A DNA stretch of 64,000 bases, taken from IMG/VR virus record IMGVR_UViG_3300028558_000791, positions 372,001 to 436,000 of that record; one strand, 5' to 3'. Both the position numbers and the translations under genes were made by a program. Below are positions 23,065 to 64,000 of the stretch, piece after piece. Numbering within the stretch: position 1 is the first letter of the stretch; each line of letters opens with the position of its first letter. Under the pieces are notes generated by a model. The model was not told the origin of the DNA. It was given only the letters and a program-made list of their open reading frames with translations, and made no database searches.

Positions 23065-23065
23065 A

Positions 23066-47952: not shown

Positions 47953-48021
47953 GGTGGGATAAGGTGAGAGGTCTTTGGCTCCCATTCACTGTCTGATCTT
48001 ACCCAAGATCGAGGTGATTCG

Positions 48022-48396
48022 ATGAACAAGAGCCAGGTTTCCGCCATCCTCGCAAGCAATCCTCGTGCCGTCACCAAGGCCGTTGTCCTACTCTTCGGCT
48101 TGCAGACCCACCAGGAGCGTGGGACACATCGCACCATCGACGACAACGGGGTCGGGTTCAGCGCGGCCGACGCTGACTTCGGCACCTACTGCGCGATGTG
48201 GGTGCTCAACATCCACAAGACCACTCCGCCTCACATCGTGGCCGACCGACTGGCCCACTACTTGCAGGGCGACAACCACCGCAGGTATCGCACCCTGTCG
48301 GGGAAGTTCCTCCAACGTGCGCTGGAGATGACACCGCGCTACTGGCGGCAGCTCTCACATGCTGCGAAGGTGAAGGCGGAGTCGGTTCCCTTCTGA
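48022..48396 (+). CDS. Hypothetical early protein
   Basis: GAGGTG RBS; GC3-rich codons; NGVGFSAAD motif. Confidence 0.8.
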   Translation: MNKSQVSAILASNPRAVTKAVVLLFGLQTHQERGTHRTIDDNGVGFSAADADFGTYCAMWVLNIHKTTPPHIVADRLAHYLQGDNHRRYRTLSGKFLQRALEMTPRYWRQLSHAAKVKAESVPF

Positions 48397-48413
48397 CATC
48401 AGGCGACTCGTCG

Positions 48414-48448
48414 GGAGAGGTAGGACATCCTACCTCTCCTTTCTTTTG
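48414..48448 (+). terminator. Rho-independent terminator
   Basis: GGAGAGGTAGG...CCTACCTCTCC followed by TTTCTTTT. Confidence 0.8.
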
Positions 48449-48461
48449 TCTACAGTGTGGT

Positions 48462-48497
48462 TGGTATAGTCGTTGCAATATGCAAGGTGCCATGCCA
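48462..48497. promoter_or_regulatory. Inverted sigma54-like element, copy 3
   Basis: TGGTATAGTCGTTGCA-ata-TGCAAGGTGCCATGCCA (right arm 1 nt long). Confidence 0.6.
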
Positions 48498-48598
48498 GGT
48501 AAGTGCGAGCCAGGTAAAAGGGCGCGGCTCCCATTCACTGACTACCCAGGCCGGAAGGTGCGACGCCAACCCAAACCGAACGAAAGAGAGATACCGCC

Positions 48599-49294
48599 AT
48601 GTCCGACCTTTCCCTCTCGCCCGACAACATCATCGCTCTCCTCCTCTCGCAGCACACGTCGCACCAGGTCGCACACGAGGCGACCAAGGTGACCACCACC
48701 ATCATCCGCAACGCGGAGCCCAGCAAGAAGCAGGCCAAGCAGGCCGAGGCCCGCAAGGGCGAGGTGAAGGCTCCCATTCACAACGGCCCCAAGGTGTTCG
48801 GTGTGGCGATGCCCGACCGCAACACGCTGGATGCCAAAGGCTTCCTGATGGCTTGCCGCGATGCCGGCAAGCGCTCCTTCCAGACGGTCAACGAAGTGAC
48901 CGGCGAAGTTACCTCGGTCGTCAAGCGTGACGAGCGAGAGGTGCGCAACGATCTCATCAAGGCGATTCACGCCTACTGCGGTTACGACAACGGCCGTGAC
49001 TTCGGCTCGCAAGACACGGCGGCCAGGGCGAAGGCCAGTCGCGAGCTGAGCGGCAAGCCCATCGTCCTCGGTCCCTCGCGAGAGGAGCAGAAGGCGGCCG
49101 AGCGGTCAATGACCGGCTACGTTCACGGCATGCCGAACTACATGGCGTCCAAGGTGGCCGAGCTGACGGCACGTGAGACGGCCACGGCAGAGGAGCTGAT
49201 CGATGCCCGCAAGGAGGGCAACGAGGTGGAGGTGGCACGCTTGACCGCACTGCTCTCCAACGTGCGAGGCGAGCTGAGCCGCCTCGGTCTCTGA
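48599..49294 (+). CDS. Hypothetical early protein
   Basis: 231-aa ORF with strong codon bias. Confidence 0.8.
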   Translation: MSDLSLSPDNIIALLLSQHTSHQVAHEATKVTTTIIRNAEPSKKQAKQAEARKGEVKAPIHNGPKVFGVAMPDRNTLDAKGFLMACRDAGKRSFQTVNEVTGEVTSVVKRDEREVRNDLIKAIHAYCGYDNGRDFGSQDTAARAKASRELSGKPIVLGPSREEQKAAERSMTGYVHGMPNYMASKVAELTARETATAEELIDARKEGNEVEVARLTALLSNVRGELSRLGL

Positions 49295-49315
49295 CACACA
49301 CACGGACTTACATCA

Positions 49316-49355
49316 GAGAGGGCTGCACCTGGCGGGGTGTGGCCCTTTCGTTTTT
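49316..49355 (+). terminator. Rho-independent terminator
   Basis: GAGAGGGCTGCACC...GGTGTGGCCCTTTC followed by GTTTTT. Confidence 0.7.
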
Positions 49356-49367
49356 CCGCAATCGGCT

Positions 49368-49402
49368 TGGCACGGACGTTGCAGAGTGCAAACGATGTGC
49401 CA
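49368..49402. promoter_or_regulatory. Inverted double sigma54-like element, copy 4
   Basis: TGGCACGGACGTTGCA-gag-TGCAAACGATGTGCCA; near-perfect consensus on both strands. Confidence 0.75.
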
Positions 49403-49642
49403 CGGAGATCCGCCTCTCCACACAAGAAAGAGAGTGCCGCTCCCATTCACTGACAGTCGAGAGCGAGAAGCGCAGCAACGAACGGACGGCAGCAAGCGCA
49501 AGCAAGCGCAGCGCATGTAGGATGCGTGACTAGGAGACCCCGAAGACGTGCCCGAATGTGAGGGCATGTAAGTCACCCTACCCGATGACCATAGCGCAAG
49601 TCGTCCAGCCGAGCTGCTCCCATTCACCGCTCGCTGAAAGGA

Positions 49643-49888
49643 GTGAGCATGAGACGCCGCAACGAAGTCGATACCAACGCACTTCCGGATCTGATGCCAC
49701 GTGTGGCACGCATGTTGGAAGTGACGGGCGTGAGCATCGAAGACGTGGTGGCAGAATTGCGCACTACGGATCTGACGGAGTACAACATCTTCCTCACCAT
49801 CAAAGGTGCGGCCATGTGTTACCCTCACGTCAAGCAAGCGCTCGCTGATGCCTGCCCCGACACTCTGCCCTCTCCCATTCACGACTGA
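49643..49888 (+). CDS. Hypothetical protein (start 49643 or 49649)
   Basis: AAGGAG RBS; C-terminus PSPIHD is encoded by the repeat. Confidence 0.7.
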   Translation: MSMRRRNEVDTNALPDLMPRVARMLEVTGVSIEDVVAELRTTDLTEYNIFLTIKGAAMCYPHVKQALADACPDTLPSPIHD

Positions 49889-49944
49889 CTCGAAACGATA
49901 AACGCCGCAAGGCAATCACCGCAACGAACGAAAGAGAGACCATC

Positions 49945-50133
49945 ATGGAAAACGTCAAGTTCACCCGCAACGGCGACAAGCTCACCATCGAAGTCGACCT
50001 CGCCTACCGTGGGCAGGTGTCCGCCACCGGCAAGACCCTTCGGGTCGCCAGCACCGAAGGCAACGTCCCCTGCGACGGTTCCCCCGAGATCAAGATCGGT
50101 CTCAACATCTTCGCCCCTGTTCCCAAGAAGTAA
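49945..50133 (+). CDS. Small hypothetical protein, paralogue of 56324..56500
   Basis: MENVK...LTIEVDLA.RG..S.TGKT.RVASTEGN. Confidence 0.85.
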   Translation: MENVKFTRNGDKLTIEVDLAYRGQVSATGKTLRVASTEGNVPCDGSPEIKIGLNIFAPVPKK

Positions 50134-50203
50134 TTCGCCTACATCGGCGAGCCCCCTGCAATCCCGATACCAACAGGTACGCAAGGGACAGGGGGCTGAC
50201 TCT

Positions 50204-50290
50204 TCGCCAGTGCTACACGAAAAACGGGGCGGGACGCCTCGGCCTTCCAAGGTGGTGTAGCGTAAGGGTTCGATTCCCTGACTGGCGACC
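50204..50290 (+). ncRNA. tRNA-like element with acceptor-like stem and T-arm but no D-arm
   Basis: TCGCCAGT/ACTGGCGA, GCTACAC/GTGTAGC, AGGG-TTCGATT-CCCT. Confidence 0.55.
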
Positions 50291-50338
50291 CTGGCTCCCA
50301 TTCATGAGCCAGTAGATTCCAACATCGGAGGTTCCAAC

Positions 50339-50626
50339 ATGAAGTCACTCGACATGGCAGACAAGTATCCCCCGGCCGAAGACTTCGATGATGAGGACAC
50401 CACCGTCCGCATGCATGTGCCTACCTTCCTCCCCAAGGTCATCGTCGAGGATGAGGGTGAGGACGAGTACGACCTCTGGGGAGCTAGGGATACCATCCCC
50501 TGCCCACCTCCCTACCCTCATCCCCACATGAAGCGAGAAGTCAATTGGGGTGCAGTCGGCATCCTTGCCTTCACCATCGTCTTCTGGTGGACCGTCGGCT
50601 ACATGCTCTACTGCTGGATCTACTGA
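50339..50626 (+). CDS. Acidic protein with a C-terminal TM anchor
   Basis: GGAGG RBS; hydrophobic C-terminus. Confidence 0.75.
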   Translation: MKSLDMADKYPPAEDFDDEDTTVRMHVPTFLPKVIVEDEGEDEYDLWGARDTIPCPPPYPHPHMKREVNWGAVGILAFTIVFWWTVGYMLYCWIY

Positions 50627-50710
50627 CCAGCTCCCTGGCCCGACCTCCCATTCACTGGGAGGCGGGCTTTAGGCATTATCAGGGGGCATGGGCAATGTCC
50701 CCATCTGTGT

Positions 50711-50852
50711 AGGAGGAATGCCGAGTAGTCGCTCAAGCCTGGAACATGGCGACACGAGCGTAAAAAGACTAGCAGGTGTCACACACCGTTTGGGCTAACT
50801 AGCTCCCGAGTGTGTGAAACTGTAATCTAGTGTAGCTACTCGTAACTCTCCT
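50711..50852 (+). ncRNA. Candidate structured RNA
   Basis: Nested helices AGGAG/CTCCT, CGAGTAG/CTACTCG, CGCTC/GAGCG, TCACACAC/GTGTGTGA-like. Confidence 0.45.
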
Positions 50853-50892
50853 TGTGTTCTCTCCCATTCACAACTCACCCTGAGGTGCAGCC

Positions 50893-51141
50893 ATGGCGTA
50901 CGGTCTTTGGAATGTGAGCGGTAAGGTCATCATCCCCGGCACGCGCAAGAGCGCCAGCTTCGGTCCCGTTCGCATCGGCGATAAGGATCGTCAGACCGCC
51001 AGCAAGTGGCTGGCCTGCATGCTGAACGACAAGTTCAAGCGTGACCTGCGCGGAGGTGCGAAGTTCTCCGACCACTTCGCCCTCATGAACCTGAAGTGGG
51101 AAGATGTCGGCAAAGCTGCGCCGGCTCCCGCACAGACGTGA
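50893..51141 (+). CDS. Hypothetical protein
   Basis: GAGGTG RBS; follows a repeat copy. Confidence 0.75.
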   Translation: MAYGLWNVSGKVIIPGTRKSASFGPVRIGDKDRQTASKWLACMLNDKFKRDLRGGAKFSDHFALMNLKWEDVGKAAPAPAQT

Positions 51142-51188
51142 GGTGGATGGCTCCAGGGTAATACCTGGGGCCGTTCTTCAAAAGGCGG

Positions 51189-51223
51189 TGGCACGCCCGT
51201 TGCACTCTGCATCCCGCATGCCA
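51189..51223. promoter_or_regulatory. Inverted double sigma54-like element, copy 5
   Basis: TGGCACGCCCGTTGCA-ctc-TGCATCCCGCATGCCA. Confidence 0.75.
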
Positions 51224-51268
51224 TCGCCGCTTCGGCTCCCATTCACAACCCCCTGGAGAGCAACGAAC

Positions 51269-51415
51269 ATGGCAACGTCATTCGTCATCAAGCTCCCCAA
51301 GCAGAAAGCGCGTAACCCCCTGGGTCACATGCAAGAGCGGAAGCAGATCATGCGTGACCGTCGCAACCGGCGTCCCAAGGATGCCCGCAAGCAACGCGAA
51401 CCCTTCGAGTCCTGA
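51269..51415 (+). CDS. Small basic protein MATSFVIKLPKQKARNP...
   Basis: GGAG RBS; flanked by two repeat copies. Confidence 0.7.
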   Translation: MATSFVIKLPKQKARNPLGHMQERKQIMRDRRNRRPKDARKQREPFES

Positions 51416-51450
51416 ACCCTCCCATTCACCGCCAACAAGTGGAGATGCAC

Positions 51451-51633
51451 ATGAGCAAGCAAACGTTCCGAGTGGTCGAGATGACGATTGTCCCTGGCCA
51501 GGAGCCGGCGACCAAACTCGTGCAGGGCAACCTCCCCAAGGGCAAGGCTCAGTCTCTCCAGGAGAAGCTGGAAGAGAAGCTCGGCGACTTCGACCCGCAG
51601 AAGGTGGTCTCCTACCTGGTCCAACCAGCATGA
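51451..51633 (+). CDS. Small hypothetical protein MSKQTF...
   Basis: GGAG RBS. Confidence 0.7.
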   Translation: MSKQTFRVVEMTIVPGQEPATKLVQGNLPKGKAQSLQEKLEEKLGDFDPQKVVSYLVQPA

Positions 51634-51881
51634 CTGTAGCACCGAACCTTGCCAGCATCCAAAGCGTAGGATGCTGGTACGAGGACCAGGAACGTACGCA
51701 ACCCATGCGGTACCAGGTGTGTGTACGCCAGTTCCGTAGAGGTGAGTGGGAAGTCATGATGGGTAGCATCGTAACCTACCTGTCACCCGAAGACTACTGC
51801 GACATGCATCAGCTACTACTGGTGGAGATGTATCGTGGCACGCGCCATGCACTCTCACACGAACGCACGGAGTTGATCTAA
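51630..51881 (+). CDS. Hypothetical protein MTVAPNL...
   Basis: ATGA overlap with the upstream gene. Confidence 0.6.
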   Translation: MTVAPNLASIQSVGCWYEDQERTQPMRYQVCVRQFRRGEWEVMMGSIVTYLSPEDYCDMHQLLLVEMYRGTRHALSHERTELI

Positions 51882-52216
51882 CGATCCTCCTACAAGTCAG
51901 CAGAGCTGGGGAGGATGTCATGTAACATCACACGGTTGATGACCGTTGTTTACTTGCGCCGACAACCAGAGAGATAGTAGCGACTCCCATTCATCGACAC
52001 CCTCAAACCAAAGGAATCGAGATGCTGGGTTTAGTCGGGCGGGAGTGAGTCCCGCCCATCCTTGGCTACAGTGCTGCCCACGCGACTCTATGGGCTCTAG
52101 CTGCAAGGTAATTAGGTAACGTAGTCTGCAACGTTCTCACATAAGCGTTCCGGGTTTAGGAACCAGTGAGTCATATCCTTCTAGGATGTGGGGATACGTC
52201 AGCTACCTACCGTTGG

Positions 52217-52243
52217 ATTGGGGCCTGGCGAGGCCCCAATTTT
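52217..52243 (+). terminator. Rho-independent terminator
   Basis: ATTGGGGCCT-ggcg-AGGCCCCAAT followed by TTT. Confidence 0.65.
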
Positions 52244-52332
52244 AATACGAACGCACCTACCCCGCACCACAGCACAGCACACACGGCGCCATCAGGGCGC
52301 TTTTTGTTAGCGTACATGTAGGGAAAGGTAGT

Positions 52333-52367
52333 TGGCATGGGCAGTGCATATTGCAAACGATATGCCA
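52333..52367. promoter_or_regulatory. Inverted double sigma54-like element, copy 6
   Basis: TGGCATGGGCAGTGCA-tat-TGCAAACGATATGCCA. Confidence 0.7.
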
Positions 52368-52417
52368 GCAGGTTCCGCCCGCACAATCAAGCGACCGAAG
52401 GTGTGGGATAAGGTGGT

Positions 52418-52452
52418 TGGCATGGCCGTTGCATATTGCGAAGGCTATGCCG
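52418..52452. promoter_or_regulatory. Inverted double sigma54-like element, copy 7
   Basis: TGGCATGGCCGTTGCA-tat-TGCGAAGGCTATGCCG. Confidence 0.7.
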
Positions 52453-52632
52453 GGCTGGGCGCGAGGGTGCAAGGGAAGCGGCTCCCATTCACGGATAGCC
52501 GGCGACCGAAAGCGCCGCAACCAACCACGAACAAGCAAACGAGTCACACACTCACAATGACTCACAAGGTACGGAACGGCAGCTCCCATTCACGGCGCAT
52601 CGAACGCCAAGGTCACGACGGAGGAAACGAAC

Positions 52633-52833
52633 ATGGGTAAAGTCATCGTCATCATTCTGGCCACGTGTGCGGCACTGGGTATCCTGGTGCACTTCCTGGG
52701 CCATGCGACTATGGGGTCAACGGCCGTCACTGTCCCCAACACGGAACACACTCCCGCATTCGGACTTACATGGTTCGTGATCGGTGGTCTGTTCATCGGC
52801 GGTCTCTTCTACAAGCTCGTCAAGGGCAAGTAG
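52633..52833 (+). CDS. Small two-TM membrane protein
   Basis: GGAGG RBS; two hydrophobic segments. Confidence 0.75.
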   Translation: MGKVIVIILATCAALGILVHFLGHATMGSTAVTVPNTEHTPAFGLTWFVIGGLFIGGLFYKLVKGK

Positions 52834-52857
52834 GAGGGCCTGTAGGAATCTGGGTAT

Positions 52858-52925
52858 ACCCCCTACCCCTAAAAAAGTTTTACCTGTTTTCCCAAAAACG
52901 GTAATCGGGGTTCGGTATACGCATA
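52858..52925 (+). repeat. 68-bp intergenic element, copy 1
   Basis: ACCCCCYACCCCTAAAAAAGTTTT-N17-CGGTAATCGGG...CATA, collinear with 55527..55594. Confidence 0.7.
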
Positions 52926-53040
52926 CCATTCCTGTAGGTTTTCATGGGTGGGGTGTCAAGCCCCCAGCAAGTCTAGCTAGGAGCCTACCTTGGTTGCCAA
53001 CTAGCTAGCTCCCATTCACTGCACGTCGAGAGGTGAAAGC

Positions 53041-53295: not shown

Positions 53296-53331
53296 CCTCC
53301 CATTCACGGCGGCAGGAAAGCGACAATAGCA

Positions 53332-53533
53332 ACGGCGGGCTAGACTCTGGGTACATGGCATACTTGGTCGCTACCCAAGTAGGTCCCAACTGAGACAGTA
53401 TCTTGTAGCGAGGGAATGTCTTGGGGGCCACAAGCTCCCCACATAGGGGTTCGACTCCCCACTACTATCCAAGTGGTAGGAGACCAGGTTGGCTGGGTGT
53501 GTGTTGGCATGAACCTAGAGTCTAGCCCATCGT
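53332..53533 (+). ncRNA. Candidate structured RNA closed by a long terminal stem, with an internal T-loop hairpin
   Basis: GGGCTAGACTCTGGGTACATG pairs with CATGAACCTAGAGTCTAGCCC; internal GGGG-TTCGACT-CCCC. Confidence 0.6.
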
Positions 53534-53569
53534 CGGGCTCCCATTCACGGCCCATCAGCGGAGGATGAC

Positions 53570-53800: not shown

Positions 53801-53809
53801 CCATCTCAC

Positions 53810-54067: not shown

Positions 54068-54099
54068 CTCCCATTCACGGCAGACCGGAGAGCAAGGTC

Positions 54100-54460: not shown

Positions 54461-54508
54461 GGGCTCCCATTCACGGTCGAACGAAACCCAAGGTCGGAGG
54501 CAACGAAC

Positions 54509-55138: not shown

Positions 55139-55207
55139 GACAAGGGAGGGGCAGGTAGGTTGTCGTGGGCCTGACCTGCCCCTCCCATTCACGGAAGGAC
55201 GAGTGAC

Positions 55208-55501: not shown

Positions 55502-55526
55502 AGGTCCCTTGCTGGAGTAGGTGTAG

Positions 55527-55594
55527 ACCCCCCACCCCTAAAAAAGTTTTCGGTCAATTCTCAGAATCGGTAATCGGGCCTTGGAATCCACATA
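55527..55594 (+). repeat. 68-bp intergenic element, copy 2
   Basis: Collinear with 52858..52925. Confidence 0.7.
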
Positions 55595-55733
55595 GTTTTT
55601 TCCAGGGTTTTTTGGCTCCCATTCACTGAGCGAATCTAGCGGCGGATCGGAAAGGGTGTATGTCGCCATGAGAACCTGGGAAGAGTACGAGGAAGAGACC
55701 AGCAAGTTTCCCTGGTGGTACACGGGGGACTAG

Positions 55734-55994
55734 GTGGACACCGACGAATTCGAGATAACTGCAACACATCCACACATGGAGGCACGTGTGTGGACTAGGA
55801 GTCGCTACGAAGTAGCCAAGGCAATTGCTGATGGGGCGGTTACCAAGCTAGGGTATAGCAAGGTAGTAGTCATCAACACCTTCGGTGGCCATAGGAGCGA
55901 TACCTTGTACGAGGTAGTGTCGGGCTCCCATTCACGGGACTACGTGGAGGAGGAACGCAATGCAAGTCACCAAGCGTTCAATGCTCAGCGGTAA
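55734..55994 (+). CDS. Hypothetical protein
   Basis: GTG start with GGGGA RBS. Confidence 0.6.
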   Translation: MDTDEFEITATHPHMEARVWTRSRYEVAKAIADGAVTKLGYSKVVVINTFGGHRSDTLYEVVSGSHSRDYVEEERNASHQAFNAQR

Positions 55995-56157: not shown

Positions 56158-56323
56158 GGGGCCTGCGAGTCTGGGTAGAACCAGTAAGGATCCCTTCACG
56201 TAAACCTGTAATAGTAACCTAAACCCTTGGCCCGTACCTATCGAAAGATGGGGCGGGCATAAGGCATTGAAACAACTTGGGAGATGCAATGCTCCCATTC
56301 ACCAACGCAACGGAGCAATGCAC

Positions 56324-56500: not shown

Positions 56501-56561
56501 TTCGTAAGGGTAGGATCAACTCCCATTCACCAAACAACCAAACGAGAGACACAACATCAAC

Positions 56562-56949: not shown

Positions 56950-56955
56950 CCAACC

Positions 56956-57123
56956 ATGAAGTATCTCCTCCCATTCATAGTAGTAGTGATGATAGGTTGC
57001 AGGACGGTACTACCCAAGGAAGACTACAGCATAGTCATTACCTCTCATGTCTGCGATGTAGACGGAGGTGCGTGTCACAAGGAGACGAAGGTTCTCCCAT
57101 TCACGGCGGAGGGTTCAAAGTGA
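56956..57123 (+). CDS. Small putative lipoprotein MKYLLPFIVVVMIGC (55 aa, not in the ORF track)
   Basis: Manual translation; lipobox-like MIGC; TGATG overlap with the next gene. Confidence 0.6.
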   Translation: MKYLLPFIVVVMIGCRTVLPKEDYSIVITSHVCDVDGGACHKETKVLPFTAEGSK

Positions 57124-57371: not shown

Positions 57372-57454
57372 GGACGAAGGCGCTCCCATTCACGGGACGC
57401 CGGCACGAACGAACAACCGAGCAATCACGCTCAACTGAAAAGGACGAATCAATC

Positions 57455-57907: not shown

Positions 57908-58005
57908 GGTTCATTCGCCGACAGTGGGCCAAGGTGGTTCACTGGATCAACGACGGAACGCACGGTCCCTGCGACTGGTAGGGTTACCATTCACGGAGAG
58001 TCAGC

Positions 58006-58629: not shown

Positions 58630-58639
58630 CACGAGGTTT

Positions 58640-58819
58640 CCTAGACAGAGTGACGGTTGCCTCCCTGAATAAGACAGAGGGTTACTATGCAATGGTCAAG
58701 CGCCAGTAACCGGGACGCAGCTTGATAGGACTGACCAACTAACAAGTCAGTGGGTTTCGACTCCCATTCACGGCAGAGAACGTCGTGAGCTATATGAGGC
58801 AGGCGTCACCCTGTTTAGG
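58640..58819 (+). ncRNA. Candidate structured RNA overlapping the downstream RBS
   Basis: CCTAGACAG/CTGTTTAGG, GTGACG/CGTCAC, TGCCTC/GAGGCA closing helices; internal hairpins. Confidence 0.5.
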
Positions 58820-58828
58820 AGATACATC

Positions 58829-59188
58829 ATGTGCAATCCCGATGTGGATACTAAGGTCGAGTTGGCGAGACTGCCACAACTCCTACGGGAGAGGGGATGG
58901 TCAAGCTCAGAAGTCAAGAAGGACTATCCTGGTTCTTCTGGTCCTGGCGACTGGATCCAAGGTTCCTCGGGGCCAACCGAAACCCACCAGGGGATCACTT
59001 TCTTCTCTGGCACACCATTCCAGGTGATTGCCCGTGAGGATGACCTAAAGGTACGAGTAGGTTGGCCGGCACAAGGAACGACTACCTATACTTGCTTCTC
59101 AGCAGAGCAGGTGGAATGGTGGTTGGGTAAGATACTGGAGATGGCCGACAAGGACATTGCTGATAGACGACGGGCCTTACTAGTCTGA
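58829..59188 (+). CDS. Hypothetical protein
   Basis: AGGAG RBS. Confidence 0.7.
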   Translation: MCNPDVDTKVELARLPQLLRERGWSSSEVKKDYPGSSGPGDWIQGSSGPTETHQGITFFSGTPFQVIAREDDLKVRVGWPAQGTTTYTCFSAEQVEWWLGKILEMADKDIADRRRALLV

Positions 59189-59191
59189 GAT

Positions 59192-59271
59192 GTAGCTAAG
59201 AGAGCGTAGGTTCGCTCAAGGGTGTTGTAACCCTGGCCTGATCAACCGTGGTTCGAGTCCACCTAGCTACC
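59192..59271 (+). tRNA. Degenerate tRNA / tRNA-like RNA (non-canonical anticodon loop, identity uncertain)
   Basis: GTAGCTA/TAGCTAC acceptor, GAGCG/CGCTC D-arm, AGGGT/ACCCT with 6-nt loop GTTGTA, GTGG-TTCGAGT-CCAC T-arm; no encoded CCA. Confidence 0.55.
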
Positions 59272-59272
59272 C

Positions 59273-59410
59273 GAGCTGACTGTCACACCGAAGGATACGA
59301 CCCTCTCCAAAGAACCCCCAGGGAGGCTACGGAGGATCTTTTCGTCCCTCGATGGACTAGGTGGCACATCCCCGAAGGTGGTTGGGGAAGTGTGCAACGA
59401 CAGTCGGCTC
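59273..59410 (+). ncRNA. Candidate structured RNA
   Basis: 12-bp closing stem GAGCTGACTGTC/GACAGTCGGCTC; internal GCACATCCCC/GGGGAAGTGTGC hairpin. Confidence 0.45.
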
Positions 59411-59439
59411 TCTAATTGCACTCTGCAAAACAGGAGCCA
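59405..59439. promoter_or_regulatory. Inverted double sigma54-like element, copy 8
   Basis: CGGCTCTCTAATTGCA-ctc-TGCAAAACAGGAGCCA; GG-N10-GC on both strands. Confidence 0.6.
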
Positions 59440-59481
59440 TCGGTGCTCCCATTCACGGCACGACGAAAGCCGAGGGAGTCG

Positions 59482-59670
59482 ATGTATCCTATCGTTTGCA
59501 AACATCACAAGGAACATTGCGAGGACTGCGCTATGTGTCGTAACTTCGACCAGGCTGTCCAACAGAGCTTAGTGAGTTTCAAGCCTCATCCTAGCCAACA
59601 CTCCACGGTCATGATGCCGAGAATCAAGGCTTGGATTGACTCAGTGTTTCCGGTTCCCATCAAGTCATAG
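59482..59670 (+). CDS. Small Cys/His-rich protein MYPIVCKHH...
   Basis: GAGGGAG RBS. Confidence 0.65.
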   Translation: MYPIVCKHHKEHCEDCAMCRNFDQAVQQSLVSFKPHPSQHSTVMMPRIKAWIDSVFPVPIKS

Positions 59671-59676
59671 GGCCAC

Positions 59677-60045
59677 ATGAAACTCCTACTCAACGCCATT
59701 CAATGTCTGTCATGTGATGAAGTGATTGTCTCTCGGGACCGTCATGACTTCAAGACATGCAAGTGTGGTAAGGTTAGCGTGGATGGTGGGTTGGACTACA
59801 AACGGCGTGCCTTCCAGGGAGTACATAGTTACTTGGAGCGTTGTGCCTGGACCTATTCCAAGAACACCAATCCCAGCGATGTGGTAGACAAGTTCATTGT
59901 CTGGAGTCCTGGCGGCAAGACCAATCCTGGAGTCATCTTCGACTATCAGGGCGATGCCGAAGCATCGGCCAAGGAACTATCGGCCAGGGTTCCAGAGAGT
60001 GATTGGTACGTGGCACAACTGTATCACGTGCCCACTAAGCCATGA
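59677..60045 (+). CDS. Zn-ribbon protein
   Basis: NAIQCLSC..VIVS..RHDFKTCKCG.VSVDGG. Confidence 0.8.
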   Translation: MKLLLNAIQCLSCDEVIVSRDRHDFKTCKCGKVSVDGGLDYKRRAFQGVHSYLERCAWTYSKNTNPSDVVDKFIVWSPGGKTNPGVIFDYQGDAEASAKELSARVPESDWYVAQLYHVPTKP

Positions 60046-60749
60046 TTCGCTGGCTACTTGCCAAGCTCTGGGAGAAGGTCAATCTACCTGCTGTCTATCG
60101 AGAGATGAAAGCTCTTGGTAAGAAGCATGGTCGAAGATTCTTCTGGGCGGCTATCATCTGGGAAGCCATCGAAGACATCGTGCTCCCATTCATCGCCTGG
60201 TTGTGCGGAGTGCCAGAGTTGATTCCGGTCTTCCTGGTCCTGCACTTCGAGCCCATCGTTTACCCTGCCTTCTTCTGGGGATTCAAAACCTGGGACCGGC
60301 TACATGGTAGGGAACCTTGGGAGCCTAATCGAGAAGCTCAGTCTACACACTGGCGTTCTATCCTGAAAGGACTCACACTTCATCTGACTGTCTCTGGCTG
60401 GTTGTTACAGGTTGTTGCCTGGAAGCCACTAGCTATCCTGATGGTACTGATGAGTCTCTTTGGATTCATTCACGAGCGTATCTGGCATGATACTAACTAT
60501 GGTATCATTGGAGATGATGTAGTTCAGTATCGGCGAAGCCTCGCTAAAGCTGGCACCTACTTGCTCATCTCCAGCATGACACTGTATCCTCTCCTGAAGG
60601 TTACTGGCTCGGTGCATATTCTGCATTCGTTGCTACTGGCTCAAGGTATAACGGGTTTCTTGTACCTGTTGTTGGAGAGTGTGTGGGCCAAGTCTAAGTG
60701 GGGTGTGACTCCCATTCACCCGCCTGATGACCCCGAGGAACATCGATAA
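60042..60749 (+). CDS. Multi-pass membrane protein (DUF2061-like HERIW motif)
   Basis: Several TM segments; HERIW...YG and ESVW...WG internal repeat. Confidence 0.75.
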   Translation: MIRWLLAKLWEKVNLPAVYREMKALGKKHGRRFFWAAIIWEAIEDIVLPFIAWLCGVPELIPVFLVLHFEPIVYPAFFWGFKTWDRLHGREPWEPNREAQSTHWRSILKGLTLHLTVSGWLLQVVAWKPLAILMVLMSLFGFIHERIWHDTNYGIIGDDVVQYRRSLAKAGTYLLISSMTLYPLLKVTGSVHILHSLLLAQGITGFLYLLLESVWAKSKWGVTPIHPPDDPEEHR

Positions 60750-60754
60750 AACAT

Positions 60755-60946
60755 ATGCTGACTCCCGAGGAAGCTGTTGCCTATCACTTCATCAAGGCTT
60801 GGTTGGCGTGGGAAGAGGCCCATGACATTCAAGAATGGATGGAGCGAGGTTTCAAGTTCAACGACGCTGATAGCCATCTCTATCAGGCCATTGGGCTTGC
60901 TGGATTGAAGTGGCCTTGGGAGTATCGCCTTCCCCGCAAGAGGTAG
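60755..60946 (+). CDS. Small hypothetical protein
   Basis: ORF in operon. Confidence 0.6.
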   Translation: MLTPEEAVAYHFIKAWLAWEEAHDIQEWMERGFKFNDADSHLYQAIGLAGLKWPWEYRLPRKR

Positions 60947-60950
60947 CAAC

Positions 60951-61556
60951 GTGGCCTACACTGGACAACAACGGTTCCTACTCAGAGACGCTGACAAGTA
61001 TCTCGAATTGGGATATCGAGTTGGCCTAGCTAAGGACAAGAAGTTCCTCAAGGAATACAAGAACACAACGACCATGACCTTCTGGGGTCCAATGCAGACT
61101 ACTCCAGAAGTGAACGTTGACTTCAATGGCATCTCAATCATCCCCGATGAGATTGTCTGCGTGGACATTGACATACCAGACTTCAGTGTTGTGTACGAGG
61201 AACTACCTCCTACCTTCAAGGAGAAGACGCCACGTGGTTGGCATCTCTGGTATCGTCTACCACAAGTGATTGGCGCACCCTGGTCACCGCAGATCAAGTG
61301 GCGCCCGCATGTTGACTTACTGACAACAGAGAAGATTGTCACACTCAGTCTTGGTTCTCCCTTCAAACGGCGGTCTCGCTATGACACTGGGGATGACGAT
61401 GATGGGCAAGACGAACCGGCCATCGTCTCACACTGGGGTGAGCATGTGCTAAGCAGTGGAACTACAGGCTATCAACGAATGTGGCCTGATGAGACTCCTG
61501 CAAAAGCTGATCTTCCGATGGCGCCTCAATGGCTCCAAGACGCGCTGCTCAAGTAA
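60951..61556 (+). CDS. Bifunctional primase-polymerase (Prim-Pol)-like domain protein
   Basis: VCVDID, KTPRGWHLWY, C-terminal PMAPQWL. Confidence 0.7.
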   Translation: MAYTGQQRFLLRDADKYLELGYRVGLAKDKKFLKEYKNTTTMTFWGPMQTTPEVNVDFNGISIIPDEIVCVDIDIPDFSVVYEELPPTFKEKTPRGWHLWYRLPQVIGAPWSPQIKWRPHVDLLTTEKIVTLSLGSPFKRRSRYDTGDDDDGQDEPAIVSHWGEHVLSSGTTGYQRMWPDETPAKADLPMAPQWLQDALLK

Positions 61557-61568
61557 GGGCTCCCATTC

Positions 61569-61880
61569 ATGGAACCGGCTAAGCTGACTCATGTGGCGGT
61601 TCGAGTAAGAGGAGTCCTCTACTCACTACCGTCTCCCAACAGACACCATCATATCCTCTGGATTCTTGCCAAGAGAAAAGGCGATGAGGGTGCGCCAGAG
61701 GTGGCTGACGAGCACCTGCTAACGGAGACCTTGAATGCTGGCGATAACAGTCAAGGTTTCTTGGATGCCGATGGTCAGTACCTAAACAGGGCTGACGGTC
61801 TAATCAGGGCGCAAGCTACTGGACAGATCAAGAACGGGAAGACTATCGGAAGTGTTCTCACTTCGGAGGACTTGTGGTAA
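61569..61880 (+). CDS. Hypothetical protein
   Basis: RHHHI...QGFLD..G.YLNR...LTSEDLW; the ATG lies within the repeat (CTCCCATTCATG). Confidence 0.8.
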   Translation: MEPAKLTHVAVRVRGVLYSLPSPNRHHHILWILAKRKGDEGAPEVADEHLLTETLNAGDNSQGFLDADGQYLNRADGLIRAQATGQIKNGKTIGSVLTSEDLW

Positions 61881-62059
61881 TGGCCAACGAACAATCGGTT
61901 GCGGTCAACATCGAGAAGCTGGGTGAGTTTCATACTCGCCAAGACAAGTGCCCGAGCTGCAAGAGCAAGGACATCAAACAGACTGACCCACCGGAGAACG
62001 GTACGCACTCCAAGGAGTGCAACATCTGTGACTATCACTGGATGGAAACGCTTTCGTAG
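61880..62059 (+). CDS. Small Zn-ribbon protein
   Basis: CPSC...CNIC; TAATG overlap. Confidence 0.7.
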   Translation: MANEQSVAVNIEKLGEFHTRQDKCPSCKSKDIKQTDPPENGTHSKECNICDYHWMETLS

Positions 62060-62094
62060 CGCCTCCCATTCACGGCACATCGGGGGCCGAAGCC

Positions 62095-62493
62095 ATGAGC
62101 AAGCAGAACGAAATCGTACTCAAGCTGTATGACGAAGAGGGAGACGAGGTGGAGCACACCTTCCCTTCCAAGAACGAAGTGTGTCCGACCTGTGAAGGAT
62201 TCGGTACTCACCTCAACCCCAGCATCGGCAACCATGCTTACACCATGGAAGAATTCAACGAGTCCTTCGATGAAGAAGGTAAGGAAGAATACTTCCGTCG
62301 GGGCGGCATCTACGATGTCACCTGCGAAGAGTGCAAGGGCAACAAGGTCATCCAGGTAGTGGATGAGGACCATCTTAGCGATGAGCAGAAGAAGCTTTAC
62401 GCAGAGTGGGAAGAGCAAGAGGAAGAACGAATCAGTGATGAGAGGGCTGATGCTCGCACTCGCTACTACGAATCTGGAGGCTACGATTACTGA
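62095..62493 (+). CDS. DnaJ-type CxxCxG Zn-finger protein
   Basis: CPTCEGFG...CEECKG. Confidence 0.8.
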   Translation: MSKQNEIVLKLYDEEGDEVEHTFPSKNEVCPTCEGFGTHLNPSIGNHAYTMEEFNESFDEEGKEEYFRRGGIYDVTCEECKGNKVIQVVDEDHLSDEQKKLYAEWEEQEEERISDERADARTRYYESGGYDY

Positions 62494-62846
62494 TGCCATC
62501 TCCCATTCACAATCCGTCGTTCGTCCAACGTAATCCAGCCACCAAGGAAATTGATGTGCAAGCCAGCCTGCGTATCATTGCCAAGGACTTGATTACTCAG
62601 AGGGACGAAGAGAAGCGGGTTCGCTCCAGTCGTCGGTATCGCAATGCGGTCCGGGCTGTCCTTCTCGCCAATAACAACATCCCCATGACCAGGGCAGAGT
62701 TGGTCCGTGGTGCCATCACCAAGCTCAGAGTCAAGGATTCCGAACGGACCAAGACGCTGGATGACTTGTGGAACCATGTCACCGCCAACCGCGAATTCGG
62801 CTACCTGTATATGGCAGGCCGAGGAATGAATCTCAAGCAACCATGA
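62493..62846 (+). CDS. Basic hypothetical protein
   Basis: TGATG overlap; N-terminus MPSPIH encoded by the repeat. Confidence 0.7.
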   Translation: MPSPIHNPSFVQRNPATKEIDVQASLRIIAKDLITQRDEEKRVRSSRRYRNAVRAVLLANNNIPMTRAELVRGAITKLRVKDSERTKTLDDLWNHVTANREFGYLYMAGRGMNLKQP

Positions 62847-63172
62847 AGCTCCCATTCATCGCCTCACTCATCGCTCTCGTCAGTGTCGTGGGTTGTGCAG
62901 CAGCCCCGCCCCCTGCACCGTTGCCTCCAGTGGTGGTGACCATCAGGGACATCCCGACTCCTCCCGTCAGGGGTGAAGTTGTGGAGGACTCGGTTGTGGT
63001 GGTGGAGTCTGTCCAAGAGGAGACTCACGAGGCCATGAATCCCGAGGACTACCAGAGGTTGTCTGGTCTTATTCACCGTGAGACGGCCAGCATCAAGTGT
63101 GTCTGCACTGCGGGTGACCCGCACTGCTTCTGCCGACTGCCCAACGGCCCCAAGATTCTTCCCAAGGAGTGA
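62843..63172 (+). CDS. Putative lipoprotein MKLPFIASLIALVSVVGC
   Basis: ATGA overlap; lipobox VVGC; CVC..GDPHC. Confidence 0.75.
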   Translation: MKLPFIASLIALVSVVGCAAAPPPAPLPPVVVTIRDIPTPPVRGEVVEDSVVVVESVQEETHEAMNPEDYQRLSGLIHRETASIKCVCTAGDPHCFCRLPNGPKILPKE

Positions 63173-63175
63173 GTC

Positions 63176-63487
63176 ATGAGTGAGTATCTCAATAAGAACG
63201 GACTAGTGCAGGGTCTCATTCCTGCCAATACCGCTTGTCCGTTCTTGGAGAACTGCAAGCTCAAGGTTCACACCTGTCCTGGTGTGGATGGCAAGATGAA
63301 GCCAAACCACTTCTCTTGTGCCGCTGCCAGACTACACTCCGCAATCGCTCAAGCGGCTGATGCTCCCGCCTTTCAAGCTAAGGCTAGGAGTATCGTGGAG
63401 AAAGAGCCAACTCTCTTCGAGATTAGGCGCGGCAAAGCTTACATTACTTTTGGTAGTATGCCTGCCGTCAAGGATCCCAACAAGTGA
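63176..63487 (+). CDS. Cys-containing hypothetical protein
   Basis: AAGGAG RBS. Confidence 0.7.
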   Translation: MSEYLNKNGLVQGLIPANTACPFLENCKLKVHTCPGVDGKMKPNHFSCAAARLHSAIAQAADAPAFQAKARSIVEKEPTLFEIRRGKAYITFGSMPAVKDPNK

Positions 63488-63615
63488 AACCGTCTCCCAT
63501 TCACTGCAAGGTCTGTCAACACAACATGGGACGGTCCAGGGTCAAGGGTGGCCGAGTGCGGTGTAATAACTGCAAGACGGTTTATATCGTTACCATAGTC
63601 CCCAAGAAAGACTGA
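63484..63615 (+). CDS. Small Zn-ribbon protein (43 aa, not in the ORF track)
   Basis: GTGA overlap; MKPSPIHCKVC...CNNC. Confidence 0.6.
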   Translation: MKPSPIHCKVCQHNMGRSRVKGGRVRCNNCKTVYIVTIVPKKD

Positions 63616-63616
63616 C

Positions 63617-63943
63617 ATGGCTACCTACAAAGTCGAGCTGGATGCTGATGGACGTACTCACTATGTGATGGACTTGAAGTCTGGTCACGGCAAGGAGAAG
63701 TATGCTCACACCATGCTCATCTACTACTACCCGGCAGGTGACATCGACACTCGTATGAAAGACGCTCATATGATGTATGGCGCCCTTTACGATCTCTTCC
63801 AGACTCACGATGACTTGAAGGAAGGCGACATCTTCGAGACTGAGTTTGGTCACTACCGATGTGAAGGGGTTCACGTTCTACCCAACTTCGAGTTGGGGCC
63901 GCAGCCCGAGTACATGACTCGTCAACACAACTTGGAGTGGTAA
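63617..63943 (+). CDS. Hypothetical protein
   Basis: 108-aa ORF followed by a repeat copy. Confidence 0.7.
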   Translation: MATYKVELDADGRTHYVMDLKSGHGKEKYAHTMLIYYYPAGDIDTRMKDAHMMYGALYDLFQTHDDLKEGDIFETEFGHYRCEGVHVLPNFELGPQPEYMTRQHNLEW

Positions 63944-64000
63944 ACCCGCTCCCATTCACGAACCGCAAACGAGGAAGACCATGGACAACACCACACCGCC

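What the first reader, a model, noticed from the sequence alone, without database searches (positions are those of the whole stretch)
47979..63959. 37 same-strand copies of CTCCCATTCA(C/T) punctuate the early region like cassette boundaries
Seen: 37 exact 10-mers in 16 kb (about one per 440 bp), all on the + (coding) strand; I saw none in the first 47.9 kb. Many sit within a few nt after a stop codon (51419, 53297, 54068, 54464, 61560, 62063, 63949) and shortly before the next RBS. Others lie inside coding sequence in all three frames (APIH/SPIH/TPIH, LPF, SHS) or supply the start codon (61560), which shows nucleotide-level selection. Flanks are often complementary (GCC-TCCCATTCAC-GGC; GGGC..GCCC; GTGC..GCAC), which would display the motif in an RNA loop. 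Established analogues are the polar stoperators of mycobacteriophage L5, PeSL cassettes of T4-like phages and nut-type antitermination sites; the sequence matches none that I know. Inference: a binding site for a phage repressor or antiterminator, an RNA-processing signal, a DNA-entry/translocation signal, or a recombination point for shuffling gene cassettes.
Basis: partly seen in the sequence, partly recalled or inferred. Interest (0 to 1): 0.87.

Follow-up and report, generated by a model that had tools for sequence, protein, structure and literature searches.

The report
Early-gene promoter-like box, huge phage
An invariant 11-base box sits in front of most small genes at the start of the early region of an uncultured 498-kb phage; it is most likely the core of a phage-specific promoter, which is an ordinary kind of signal, but the polymerase or sigma factor that reads it has not been identified.

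Summary
The count is real: 37 exact CTCCCATTCAY, all on the + strand, at 47979-63959, none elsewhere in the window (0.07 expected). The window belongs to a 498,445-bp phage contig. The box runs on to the contig end: 51 + copies and 0 - copies in the 109 kb I could read. Five relatives carry the same box or a variant; the core CCCAT never changes.

The box starts where GC jumps from 41% to 60%. It lies mostly just after a stop codon and 15-62 nt before an SD-ATG, with a sharp mode at 21 nt. A purine follows 2 nt after it in 109 of 111 copies. No -35-like element lies upstream. The flanks show no covariation and no RNA structure or accessibility signal.

In the cultured distant relative XacN1, the equivalent block of small genes carries 16 consensus sigma-70 promoters. 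Their -10 hexamers sit 24-30 nt before the ATG; TCCCAT sits 25 nt before it here. Sigma-70-like promoters are depleted in this region.

Best reading (about 0.6): a -35-less, -10-type promoter read by an unidentified sigma factor or polymerase. Rivals are a per-cistron leader signal and a stoperator-like roadblock. The hairpin-display claim is not supported.

The parts
47979..47989 (+). box copy 1; 32 nt before ATG 48022
   Evidence: first copy of the region. The invariant GCTCCCATTCA is conserved in 5 phages inside variable flanks
48528..48538 (+). box copy; 60 nt before ATG 48599
48771..48781 (+). box copy inside ORF 48599-49294 (codons APIH); 27 nt before the in-frame ATG 48809
   Evidence: retained in the orthologous genes of relatives
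49440..49450 (+). box copy followed by about 165 nt without an ORF
49617..49627 (+). box copy; 21 nt before ATG 49649
49872..49882 (+). box copy in the last codons of the upstream ORF; 62 nt before ATG 49945
50295..50305 (+). box copy directly after a tRNA-like stretch; 33 nt before ATG 50339
50645..50655 (+). box copy 19 nt after a stop codon; it forms the 5' arm of a hairpin and no ORF follows
50861..50871 (+). box copy; 21 nt before ATG 50893
51236..51246 (+). box copy; 22 nt before ATG 51269
51419..51429 (+). box copy 3 nt after a stop codon; 21 nt before ATG 51451
51984..51994 (+). box copy before an 8-codon mini-ORF and terminator-like hairpins
52482..52492 (+). box copy in non-coding sequence, 48 nt after a sigma-54-like palindrome
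52583..52593 (+). box copy; 39 nt before ATG 52633
53009..53019 (+). box copy; 21 nt before ATG 53041
53297..53307 (+). box copy 1 nt after stop TAG; followed by about 230 nt of structured non-coding sequence
53538..53548 (+). box copy; 21 nt before ATG 53570
54068..54078 (+). box copy abutting stop TAG; 21 nt before ATG 54100
54464..54474 (+). box copy 3 nt after a stop codon; 34 nt before ATG 54509
55182..55192 (+). box copy right after a GC hairpin; 15 nt before ATG 55208
55616..55626 (+). box copy after the AT-rich repeated element; only mini-ORFs follow
55925..55935 (+). box copy inside the 3' part of ORF 55734-55994; 24 nt before ATG 55960
56292..56302 (+). box copy; 21 nt before ATG 56324
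56520..56530 (+). box copy; 31 nt before ATG 56562
56968..56978 (+). box copy on codons 5-8 of the lipoprotein-like ORF 56956-57123
57094..57104 (+). box copy in the last codons of that ORF; 22 nt before ATG 57127
57383..57393 (+). box copy; 61 nt before ATG 57455
57984..57994 (+). degenerate copy TTACCATTCAC (2 mismatches); 11 nt before ATG 58006
58761..58771 (+). box copy; 57 nt before ATG 58829
59446..59456 (+). box copy 25 nt after a sigma-54-like element; 27 nt before ATG 59484
60183..60193 (+). box copy inside the membrane-protein ORF 60042-60749
60709..60719 (+). box copy in the last codons of that ORF; 35 nt before ATG 60755
61560..61570 (+). box copy 3 nt after a stop codon; its ATG is the start of ORF 61569-61880
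62063..62073 (+). box copy 3 nt after a stop codon; 21 nt before ATG 62095
62500..62510 (+). box copy on codons 3-6 of ORF 62493-62846
62849..62859 (+). box copy on codons 3-6 of the lipoprotein-like ORF 62843-63172
63494..63504 (+). box copy 6 nt after a stop codon; 21 nt before the ATG of a 14-codon mini-ORF
63949..63959 (+). box copy 5 nt after a stop codon; 21 nt before ATG 63981
47811..47846 (+). palindromic element whose left half fits the sigma-54 consensus TGGCAY-N5-TTGCA
47918..47955 (+). second sigma-54-like palindrome; the box lies 45 nt downstream, the same distance as in two relatives
48462..48499 (+). sigma-54-like palindrome after terminator 48413-48440
49368..49402 (+). sigma-54-like palindrome that matches on both strands, after terminator 49316-49349
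51189..51225 (+). sigma-54-like element TGGCACGCCCGTTGCA
52333..52367 (+). sigma-54-like palindrome after terminator 52285-52301
52418..52453 (+). sigma-54-like palindrome
59405..59440 (+). weaker sigma-54-like palindrome

Best explanation
The box is the core of a phage-specific promoter that heads individual early genes and small gene groups. It has no -35 element. TCCCAT acts as a -10-type element. The next 5 nt (TCAC-n in this lineage) act as a spacer. Transcription starts at the conserved purine 2 nt after the 11-mer, or possibly 4 nt further on, which gives leaders of about 20 nt that carry only the Shine-Dalgarno sequence. The box is read on duplex DNA by an RNA polymerase holoenzyme other than the host sigma-70 form. 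The many co-oriented copies give strong, gene-by-gene early expression, and density falls along the region.

Shown: the distribution, invariance, polarity and geometry of the box, its conservation with lineage-specific variants, and the absence of any RNA-structure signal.

Inferred: that it is a transcription start signal, that the region is 'early', and what reads it.
For: (1) Placement. Of the 37 copies, 24 lie 15-62 nt before an SD-ATG and 7 lie before non-coding, ncRNA-like or mini-ORF stretches, so the box is not tied to translation alone. At most 16 of 49 copies lie inside called genes, although 78% of the region is coding.

(2) Start-site-like purine. Position +12 is G or A in 109 of 111 copies, including every copy inside an ORF. 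No information lies upstream of -2.

(3) Positional equivalence with real promoters. In Xanthomonas phage XacN1, the equivalent one-direction block of small genes holds 16 TTGACA-N17-TATAAT promoters. The -10 hexamer ends 24-30 nt before the start codon in 10 of the 14 that could be assigned. Here TCCCAT ends 25 nt before the ATG in 30 of 94 assigned copies, and 26-27 nt before it in relative L197.

(4) Sigma-70-like promoters are depleted in the region: 3 found against 8.5 expected.

(5) Relatives keep the core but change the rest. L196 has CTCCCATTCAC 24 times. L198 has GACCCATTCAC. L197 has TCCCATC-NNN-CAACGG, with purines kept at the same offsets. L199 has CCCATCGATCGC. L200 has CCCATC 18 times on + and 0 times on -. 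A bipartite site with a free spacer fits recognition by a protein and does not fit contiguous RNA pairing.

(6) There is no flank covariation and no accessibility signal in RNA.

(7) Further along the region the box occurs once per several tightly packed genes, so it works at operon level. Orthologues can lose it or carry decayed copies.

(8) The core resembles the sigma-32 -10 element CCCCATnT (established knowledge).
Against: - Every strong intrinsic terminator in the region is followed by a different promoter-like element, the sigma-54-type palindrome, which lies 25-56 nt upstream of a box. This would be expected if the box were a leader element downstream of the true promoters.
- The mode at exactly 21 nt, with C at -1 of the ATG in 30 of 31 modal copies, links the box to the translation start.
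- A few copies are too close to the ATG, overlap it, or lie on the first codons, so they cannot serve that gene as a promoter (61560, 62500, 62849, 56968; gaps of 7-10 nt).
- The near-absolute invariance (111 exact copies against 8 one-mismatch copies) is stricter than in most promoter sets.
- No polymerase or sigma gene was found, but only 22% of the genome could be read.
- The box lacks the A(-11)...T(-7) pattern and the -35 element of canonical sigma-70 and sigma-32 promoters.
- No transcript data exist.
Confidence: 0.6

Rival explanations
1. The box is a transcribed leader signal. It acts on the mRNA or on the non-template strand during elongation, once per cistron or sub-operon. Possible roles are a loading site for a processivity or antitermination factor (like ops or boxA), an RNA-processing or 5'-end-defining site, or a binding site for a translational enhancer or repressor (like T4 RegA). 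In this reading the sigma-54-type palindromes and the AT-rich elements are the real promoters.
For: - The box always lies downstream of the palindromes, 25-56 nt from TTGCA, so it would be inside their transcripts. The same pairing recurs in the distant relative L197 at 41-46 nt.
- Palindromes follow each strong terminator. Their density, about 9 in 12 kb, is closer than the box density to that of the XacN1 promoters, 16 in 28 kb.
- The spacing to the ATG has a sharp mode at 21 nt.
- The box is G-free and pyrimidine-rich, as unstructured leaders are.
- It lies on the coding (non-template) strand only.
Against: - The flanks show no selection for an accessible or displayed box.
- Many genes lack the box and orthologues lose it, so it is not required for translating a cistron.
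- It also precedes stretches with no ORF.
- The L197 variant has a free 3-nt spacer, which argues against contiguous base pairing.
- The later 45 kb has almost no other recurrent promoter-like element.
- The purine at +12 and the geometry shared with XacN1 are explained more simply by a start site.
Confidence: 0.18
2. The box is a polar roadblock site on the DNA, like a stoperator. A phage protein binds the asymmetric box and stops polymerases that travel in one direction, which shuts off or silences the early region.
For: The asymmetric 11-14-bp site has one orientation relative to transcription and lies in short intergenic gaps that often touch stop or start codons. This is the distribution described for mycobacteriophage L5 stoperators (established knowledge; positions).
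Against: - The sites are confined to one co-oriented region. None lies in 47.9 kb carrying genes on both strands.
- A roadblock model does not predict the purine at +12, the mode of distance to the ATG, or the equivalence with the XacN1 -10 hexamers.
- No repressor or integrase was seen in the parts I read.
- The lineage variants keep a -10-like core rather than a whole operator.
Confidence: 0.1
3. The main role of the box is as a short homology or recombination point that shuffles gene cassettes between related phages.
For: - Gene order differs between relatives while each gene keeps its box.
- HSP ends lie within 15 nt of a box in 14-27% of cases against 5-10% at random positions.
- Some homology blocks run exactly from one box to the next.
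Against: - Any conserved signal at gene starts gives the same pattern when genes are the units of mosaicism.
- 11 bp is very short for homologous recombination.
- The box has no inverted repeat or recombinase-site anatomy.
- The invariance, the purine at +12 and the fixed distance to the ATG point to an expression signal. Shuffling is more likely a by-product, as proposed for the T4 PeSL elements.
Confidence: 0.05
4. The box is a DNA entry or translocation signal, or a Chi/KOPS-like polar signal read by a motor or a nuclease.
For: The box has strict polarity. Its density is highest at the sharp boundary where the region starts, which could be the end of the genome that enters the cell first.
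Against: Polar motor or nuclease signals ignore gene boundaries, whereas this box tracks gene starts to the nucleotide. If transcription pulls the DNA into the cell, the box would still be a promoter.
Confidence: 0.03

Closest known systems
Early sigma-70 promoter array of Xanthomonas jumbo phage XacN1 (AP018399), seen here
   Same: Both are one-direction blocks of many small genes. Both carry a repeated, co-oriented, highly conserved promoter element placed so that leaders are about 20 nt long: the -10 hexamer ends 24-30 nt before the ATG in XacN1, and TCCCAT ends 25 nt before it here. The two phages share a 694-aa protein at 41% identity.
   Different: XacN1 uses the textbook TTGACA-N17-TATAAT. 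This phage has no -35 element and a C-rich core, about 2.3 copies per kb against 0.6, and additional sigma-54-type palindromes.
Dense early-promoter modules of T4 (early promoters and PeSL cassettes) and of the SPO1 host-takeover module (established knowledge)
   Same: About one promoter per one or two small early genes, all co-oriented. Promoter-bounded gene cassettes are reshuffled between relatives.
   Different: Those promoters are sigma-70 or sigma-A promoters, and PeSL elements include a stem-loop. Here there is no stem-loop and no sigma-70 consensus.
-35-less single-block phage promoters, such as the T4 late promoter TATAAATA read by gp55 (established knowledge)
   Same: A short contiguous -10-type block is sufficient, nothing is conserved upstream, and a start purine lies a few nt downstream.
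   Different: The sequence is unrelated (C-rich rather than AT-rich). The box is used in the presumed early region rather than the late one. No gp55-like gene has been identified.
Sigma-32 (RpoH) -10 element CCCCATnT (established knowledge)
   Same: The core CCCAT(T/C) is invariant in all five lineages examined.
   Different: There is no CTTGAA -35 element at any plausible spacing, and the first C is T or A here. The resemblance is a lead only.
Mycobacteriophage L5 stoperators (established knowledge)
   Same: An asymmetric site of 11-14 bp, in one orientation relative to transcription, lying in short intergenic gaps that touch stop or start codons, present in dozens of copies.
   Different: The box is confined to one region rather than found across all transcription units. 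It is invariant rather than graded, and it has a conserved purine and a preferred distance to the ATG. The phage is huge and probably lytic.
ops (RfaH) and boxA/nut leader elements (established knowledge)
   Same: A linear element of about 12 nt on the non-template strand in leaders, downstream of promoters.
   Different: Those elements occur once or twice per operon, nut needs a boxB hairpin, and the sequences are unrelated. Here the box occurs per gene and has no adjacent hairpin.

Membership tests
sigma-70 promoter | -35 TTGACA and -10 TATAAT hexamers 16-18 bp apart | tested here: not met
   The region holds 3 consensus-like sites against 8.5 expected. No -35-like hexamer lies upstream of the box beyond shuffle level: 5 observed against 4.1.
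sigma-32 (RpoH) promoter | -10 element CCCCATnT | tested here: inconclusive
   CCCAT is invariant in five lineages, but the first C is T or A and the last T is not kept.
sigma-32 (RpoH) promoter | -35 element CTTGAA about 13-15 bp upstream | tested here: not met
   4 observed against 4.0 in shuffles.
sigma-54 promoter | GG at -24 and GC at -12 (TGGCAC-N5-TTGCA) | tested here: not met
   The box lacks this pattern. The separate palindromes do meet it: 9 matches against 0.21 expected.
T7-type single-subunit polymerase promoter | conserved block of 17-23 bp with an AT-rich upstream part and a TATA-like melting region ending at a +1 G | tested here: not met
   Only about 13-14 positions carry information, and neither an AT-rich nor a TATA-like segment is present. 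A purine start is present.
T7-type single-subunit polymerase promoter | the phage encodes the cognate polymerase | not testable with these tools
   Only 109 of 498 kb could be fetched. No ORF over 715 aa lies in the early region, and the 694-aa early protein has no Pfam or PDB match.
-35-less phage promoter (T4 gp55 type) | a single short -10-type block, nothing conserved upstream, start a few nt downstream | tested here: met
   The sequence logo shows this pattern. The free spacer in L197 keeps the purine offsets.
-35-less phage promoter (T4 gp55 type) | a cognate phage sigma factor or co-activator | not tested
   The genome is mostly unread.
L5-type stoperator | asymmetric site in one orientation relative to transcription, in short intergenic gaps | tested here: met
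L5-type stoperator | sites spread over all transcription units of the genome | tested here: not met
   None lies in window 1-47978, which carries genes on both strands.
nut / put antitermination site | adjacent conserved hairpin (boxB or put stem-loops) | tested here: not met
   There is no flank covariation and no structure signal.
PeSL-type cassette boundary | homology blocks between relatives end at the element | tested here: met
   14-27% of HSP ends lie within 15 nt of a box, against 5-10% at random positions.
PeSL-type cassette boundary | a stem-loop next to the promoter | tested here: not met
Chi / KOPS-type polar DNA motif | placement independent of gene boundaries | tested here: not met
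   At most one third of copies lie inside genes, although 78% of the region is coding. There is a sharp mode at 21 nt before the ATG.

The most novel reading that the evidence does not exclude
The box is not a promoter. It is a tag that every early cistron carries in its leader, on the RNA or on the non-template strand. A phage-delivered or host factor reads it to license phage messages for antitermination, protection or selective translation. Transcription itself starts at host sigma-54-type promoters, which would be an unprecedented way for a phage to drive its early genes.
Probability: 0.15. Interest if true: 0.8.

Novelty: new variant of a known kind. Interest (0 to 1): 0.55.

Why it matters
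If the box is a promoter, it defines the early transcription signal of a widespread but uncultured clade of 340-500-kb phages. The marker protein of that clade has more than 600 homologues, many on contigs above 400 kb. It would also show that the clade gave up the sigma-70 early promoters of its cultured relative XacN1 for a -35-less, CCCAT-core signal whose reader is unknown.

The box also works as a practical marker. It delimits early regions, orients contigs and defines gene starts in huge-phage metagenomic assemblies. Two accompanying features suggest testable ideas about host takeover: the sigma-54-type palindromes, and the fall in third-position GC from 0.75 to 0.30, which may mean that early genes are tuned to host codons and late genes to phage tRNAs.

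Tried and rejected
- **Hairpin or loop display of the box:** rejected. There is no covariation in any of seven pairing registers and no accessibility difference from flank-shuffled controls.
- **Known RNA families and tRNAs:** none at Rfam gathering thresholds across the window, none relevant at E of 1 or below in 47.5-64 kb, and no tRNA or tmRNA from ARAGORN.
- **Literature search for the string:** only unrelated primers. Searches for sigma-54 together with phage early genes or jumbo phages found nothing relevant. The XacN1 paper does not discuss promoters.
- **DNA similarity to GenBank phages:** none for the early region or for the first 20 kb.
- **Canonical -35 elements upstream of the box:** absent.
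- **T7-like promoter:** the anatomy does not fit.
- **Host search by scanning bacterial genomes for the 15-mer:** single chance hits in unrelated phyla. The one multi-hit locus (L152) is an unrelated 21-bp tandem repeat.
- **Search for a polymerase or sigma gene:** Pfam, PHROGs and PDB searches of the larger early proteins gave nothing. The rest of the 498-kb genome could not be fetched.
- **Late-promoter motif in the low-GC 47.7 kb:** no recurrent motif beyond paralogue junctions.
- **The same box in XacN1:** absent.
- **Pairing of the box with the mRNA's own SD or with rRNA:** only 4-7-nt matches, which are expected by chance, so I did not pursue it.

Full report
**The observation.** CTCCCATTCAY occurs 37 times in the window. 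All copies are on the + strand, between 47979 and 63959. Dinucleotide-preserving shuffles give 0.07. One-mismatch versions of the 9-mer are almost absent from the + strand of the region: 2 against 37 exact. The first copy lies at a sharp change in composition, where GC rises from about 0.41 over 1-47.9 kb to 0.61 and then drifts down.

The claims about stop codons, the ATG supplied at 61560 and the copies inside ORFs hold up on reading the sequence. The claim that complementary flanks display the box in a loop does not. No nested pairing of flank columns exceeds column shuffles. The predicted unpaired probability of the box in its natural context equals that in flank-shuffled controls: 0.472 against 0.475.

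**Where the window comes from.** The spacing of the copies identifies the window as part of IMG/VR contig 3300028558_000791. That contig corresponds to JGI contig Ga0265326_10000001, which is 498,445 bp long. An ENA assembly of 498,443 bp has the same ends. Window position x equals JGI position x + 389,326.

I joined the window with the fetched pieces. The box then continues from JGI 437,305 to at least 495,810, close to the contig end. There are 51 copies on + and none on - in the 109 kb covered. Density falls from about 2.5 per kb to about 0.3 per kb, and GC falls from 0.61 to 0.48. The shift is at synonymous sites: GC3 is 0.75 at the start of the region, 0.54-0.71 further along, and 0.30 in the large genes of the low-GC part.

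**Anatomy of the box.** I pooled 111 copies from this phage and two relatives, which share 70-80% nucleotide identity in patches. The consensus is gG-CTCCCATTCA(C/T)-n-R-c. Ten positions never vary. Position +12, which is 2 nt after the 11-mer, is a purine in 109 of 111 copies. Nothing upstream of -2 carries information.

In the window, 24 copies lie 15-62 nt before an SD-ATG. Seven precede stretches with only a mini-ORF or no ORF, some of them clearly structured. Six lie inside an ORF or on its first codons.

The gap between the 11-mer and the ATG is exactly 21 nt in 31 of 111 copies. In that class, C precedes the ATG in 30 of 31, although the 21 nt themselves differ.

At most one third of the copies fall inside called genes, although 78% of the region is coding. 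Further along the region the box occurs once per several tightly packed genes. There it is typically 0-12 nt after a stop codon with no terminator in between.

**Other signals nearby.** Sigma-70-like promoters are depleted in the region: 3 against 8.5 expected. A second repeated element is present: TGGCAY-N5-TTGCA-N3-TGCAA-N5-RTGCCA.
- Its left half fits the sigma-54 -24/-12 consensus exactly (9 matches against 0.21 expected).
- It follows each strong intrinsic terminator.
- It always lies 25-56 nt upstream of a box, or further when two palindromes stand in tandem.
- The arrangement at the start of the region (two palindromes, then a box 45 nt later) is conserved in five phages, while the 30 nt between palindrome and box vary freely.

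**Relatives.** Protein searches with the first gene of the region found only the same small group. The only large early protein, of 694 aa (phrog_33734, with no Pfam or PDB match), has more than 600 homologues, many on contigs of 340-490 kb. I fetched five of these neighbourhoods:

| Locus | Identity of the 694-aa protein | Box or variant | Strand count |
|---|---|---|---|
| L196 | 70% | CTCCCATTCA | 24 on +, 0 on - in 22 kb |
| L198 | 64% | cGACCCATTCACGA | 6 on + (looser pattern [AT]CCCATTCA: 6 on +, 1 on -) |
| L197 | 57% | TCCCATC-NNN-CAACGG | about 20 on + (looser core T[TC]CCATC: 23 on +, 7 on -) |
| L199 | 58% | CCCATCGATCGC | 9 on +, 0 on - |
| L200 | 51% | CCCATC | 18 on +, 0 on - |

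L197 also has sigma-54-type elements 41-46 nt upstream of its variant and a GC gradient.

CCCAT is therefore the invariant core and the rest is lineage-specific. In L197 three free positions separate two conserved parts. Even so, purines are kept at the same offsets from TCCCAT as in this phage, and the modal distance from TCCCAT to the ATG is 26-27 nt against 25 nt here.

**The cultured yardstick.** Xanthomonas phage XacN1 shares the 694-aa protein at 41% identity. It does not have the box. Its equivalent one-direction block of small genes carries 16 textbook TTGACA-N17-TATAAT promoters. In 10 of the 14 that could be assigned, the -10 hexamer ends 24-30 nt before the start codon, which implies leaders of about 20 nt. 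TCCCAT in the present phage therefore occupies, to within 2-3 nt, the place of the -10 hexamer of real early promoters in a relative.

**Interpretation.** Several features fit a -35-less, -10-type promoter core read by a protein as duplex DNA:
- the fixed purine after the box;
- the absence of any upstream element;
- the absence of any RNA-structure signal;
- the use of the box before non-coding stretches as well as genes;
- its operon-level use further along the region;
- its dispensability for individual orthologues;
- the variants that share a core but differ in spacer;
- the positional equivalence with the XacN1 promoters.

The core resembles the sigma-32 -10 element CCCCATnT, but the sigma-32 -35 element is absent, so this is only a lead. 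What reads the box is unknown. I could read only 22% of the genome, and no polymerase or sigma gene lies in it.

The main counter-evidence is the regular presence of sigma-54-type elements upstream of the box after every terminator, together with the very sharp 21-nt mode. Both would also fit a leader signal carried by each cistron. Tandem promoter classes in front of the same early genes are known from T4 (established knowledge), so I do not take the palindromes as decisive.

A stoperator-like roadblock fits the distribution. It does not fit the geometry or the restriction of the box to one region.

Homology blocks between relatives do end at the box more often than at random positions, and gene order is shuffled. 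That pattern is expected for any conserved gene-start signal, so cassette exchange is at most a by-product.

**Verdict.** The feature is real, strongly selected and specific to this clade. It is most likely a new form of a familiar thing, a phage early promoter (confidence about 0.6). Calling the region 'early' is itself an inference. It rests on the many small unknown genes in a single orientation, the host-like GC3 and the analogy with XacN1.

Noticed in passing
window 47700-48000 and onward; JGI 437.3-498 kb: GC jumps from 0.41 to 0.61 within about 200 bp and then declines over 60 kb. The change is at synonymous sites: GC3 is 0.75 at the start of the region against 0.30 in the large low-GC genes. 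The same jump and gradient occur in relatives (L022, L023, L197). This suggests that early genes are tuned to a GC-rich host and late genes to another tRNA supply.
   Followed up: partly
window 47811-47846, 47918-47955, 48462-48499, 49368-49402, 51189-51225, 52333-52367, 52418-52453, 59405-59440: Palindromic elements TGGCAY-N5-TTGCA-N3-TGCAA-N5-RTGCCA. Each half fits the sigma-54 -24/-12 consensus (9 matches against 0.21 expected). They follow the strong terminators and are conserved in relatives, including the distant L197. I found no report of sigma-54-type promoters in a phage early region. No activator gene was seen.
   Followed up: partly
window 47745-47805: A block of about 60 nt (CCCC..TTTGGGAGGCGA.CTGCCACC....CCCACACTTTTCCAG) at the GC boundary, in the divergent intergenic region. 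It is more conserved across five phages than the neighbouring genes. Its function is unknown; it could be an origin, a genome terminus, a promoter for the minus-strand genes or an RNA.
   Followed up: no
window about 50204-50294, 53400-53470, 59192-59270: Stretches with tRNA-like acceptor and T-arm features (GGTTCGAnTCC). ARAGORN and Rfam do not call them. One ends directly at a box copy.
   Followed up: partly
window 53337-53348 and 53517-53528: A 12-bp long-range inverted repeat (GGGCTAGACTCT / AGAGTCTAGCCC). It encloses about 170 nt of non-coding sequence between two box copies, which is a likely structured RNA.
   Followed up: no
window 52860-52910 and 55529-55579: A repeated AT-rich element, CCCCTAAAAAAGTTTT-N17/18-CGGTAATCGGG, lying 40-100 nt upstream of a box copy. 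It may be another promoter class or a terminator.
   Followed up: no
window 37908-45156, + strand: A tandem array of at least 17 back-to-back ORFs of 107-137 aa. They share an N-terminal CxxC...CxxC pattern and a C-terminal KLK..FS, at about 20% identity. Many junctions are the overlapping TCATGA.
   Followed up: partly
window 48771-48811: The box inside ORF 48599-49294 is followed 27 nt later by an in-frame SD-ATG (48809). A shorter 161-aa isoform may be made. The internal box is kept in relatives.
   Followed up: partly
window 56956-57123 and 62843-63172: Two small lipoprotein-like ORFs (signal peptide ending in Cys). The box itself encodes L-P-F in their first codons.
   Followed up: no
window 1-20777: Very large proteins (575-1446 aa) with E1_FCCH and Laminin_G_3 domains. 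They are probably fibre or receptor-binding proteins and have no PHROG match.
   Followed up: partly
window 20778-26359, 34809-35903, 45153-47527: The low-GC part encodes DHFR, ThyX, an RNase T-type exonuclease, a protein with an RF-1 (peptide release factor) domain, and a cluster of peptidases (M10-like, trypsin-like, C39-like) next to the boundary.
   Followed up: partly
L017:3025-5109 (JGI about 464.3-466.4 kb): A 694-aa early protein of unknown function (phrog_33734). It is preceded by a box and has more than 600 homologues, many on 340-490-kb contigs, as well as in XacN1 and Xoo-sp13. It is a useful marker for this huge-phage clade.
   Followed up: partly
L071 (XacN1 record 308-341 kb, minus strand): The block of small genes in XacN1 carries 16 near-identical consensus sigma-70 promoters with extended -10 elements and leaders of about 20 nt. 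The XacN1 paper does not mention them.
   Followed up: partly
L152:1600-1900 (uncultured bacterium bin KR_bin-2776): An unrelated 21-bp tandem repeat (GGCTCYCATTCACGGAACATT) contains the box by coincidence.
   Followed up: yes
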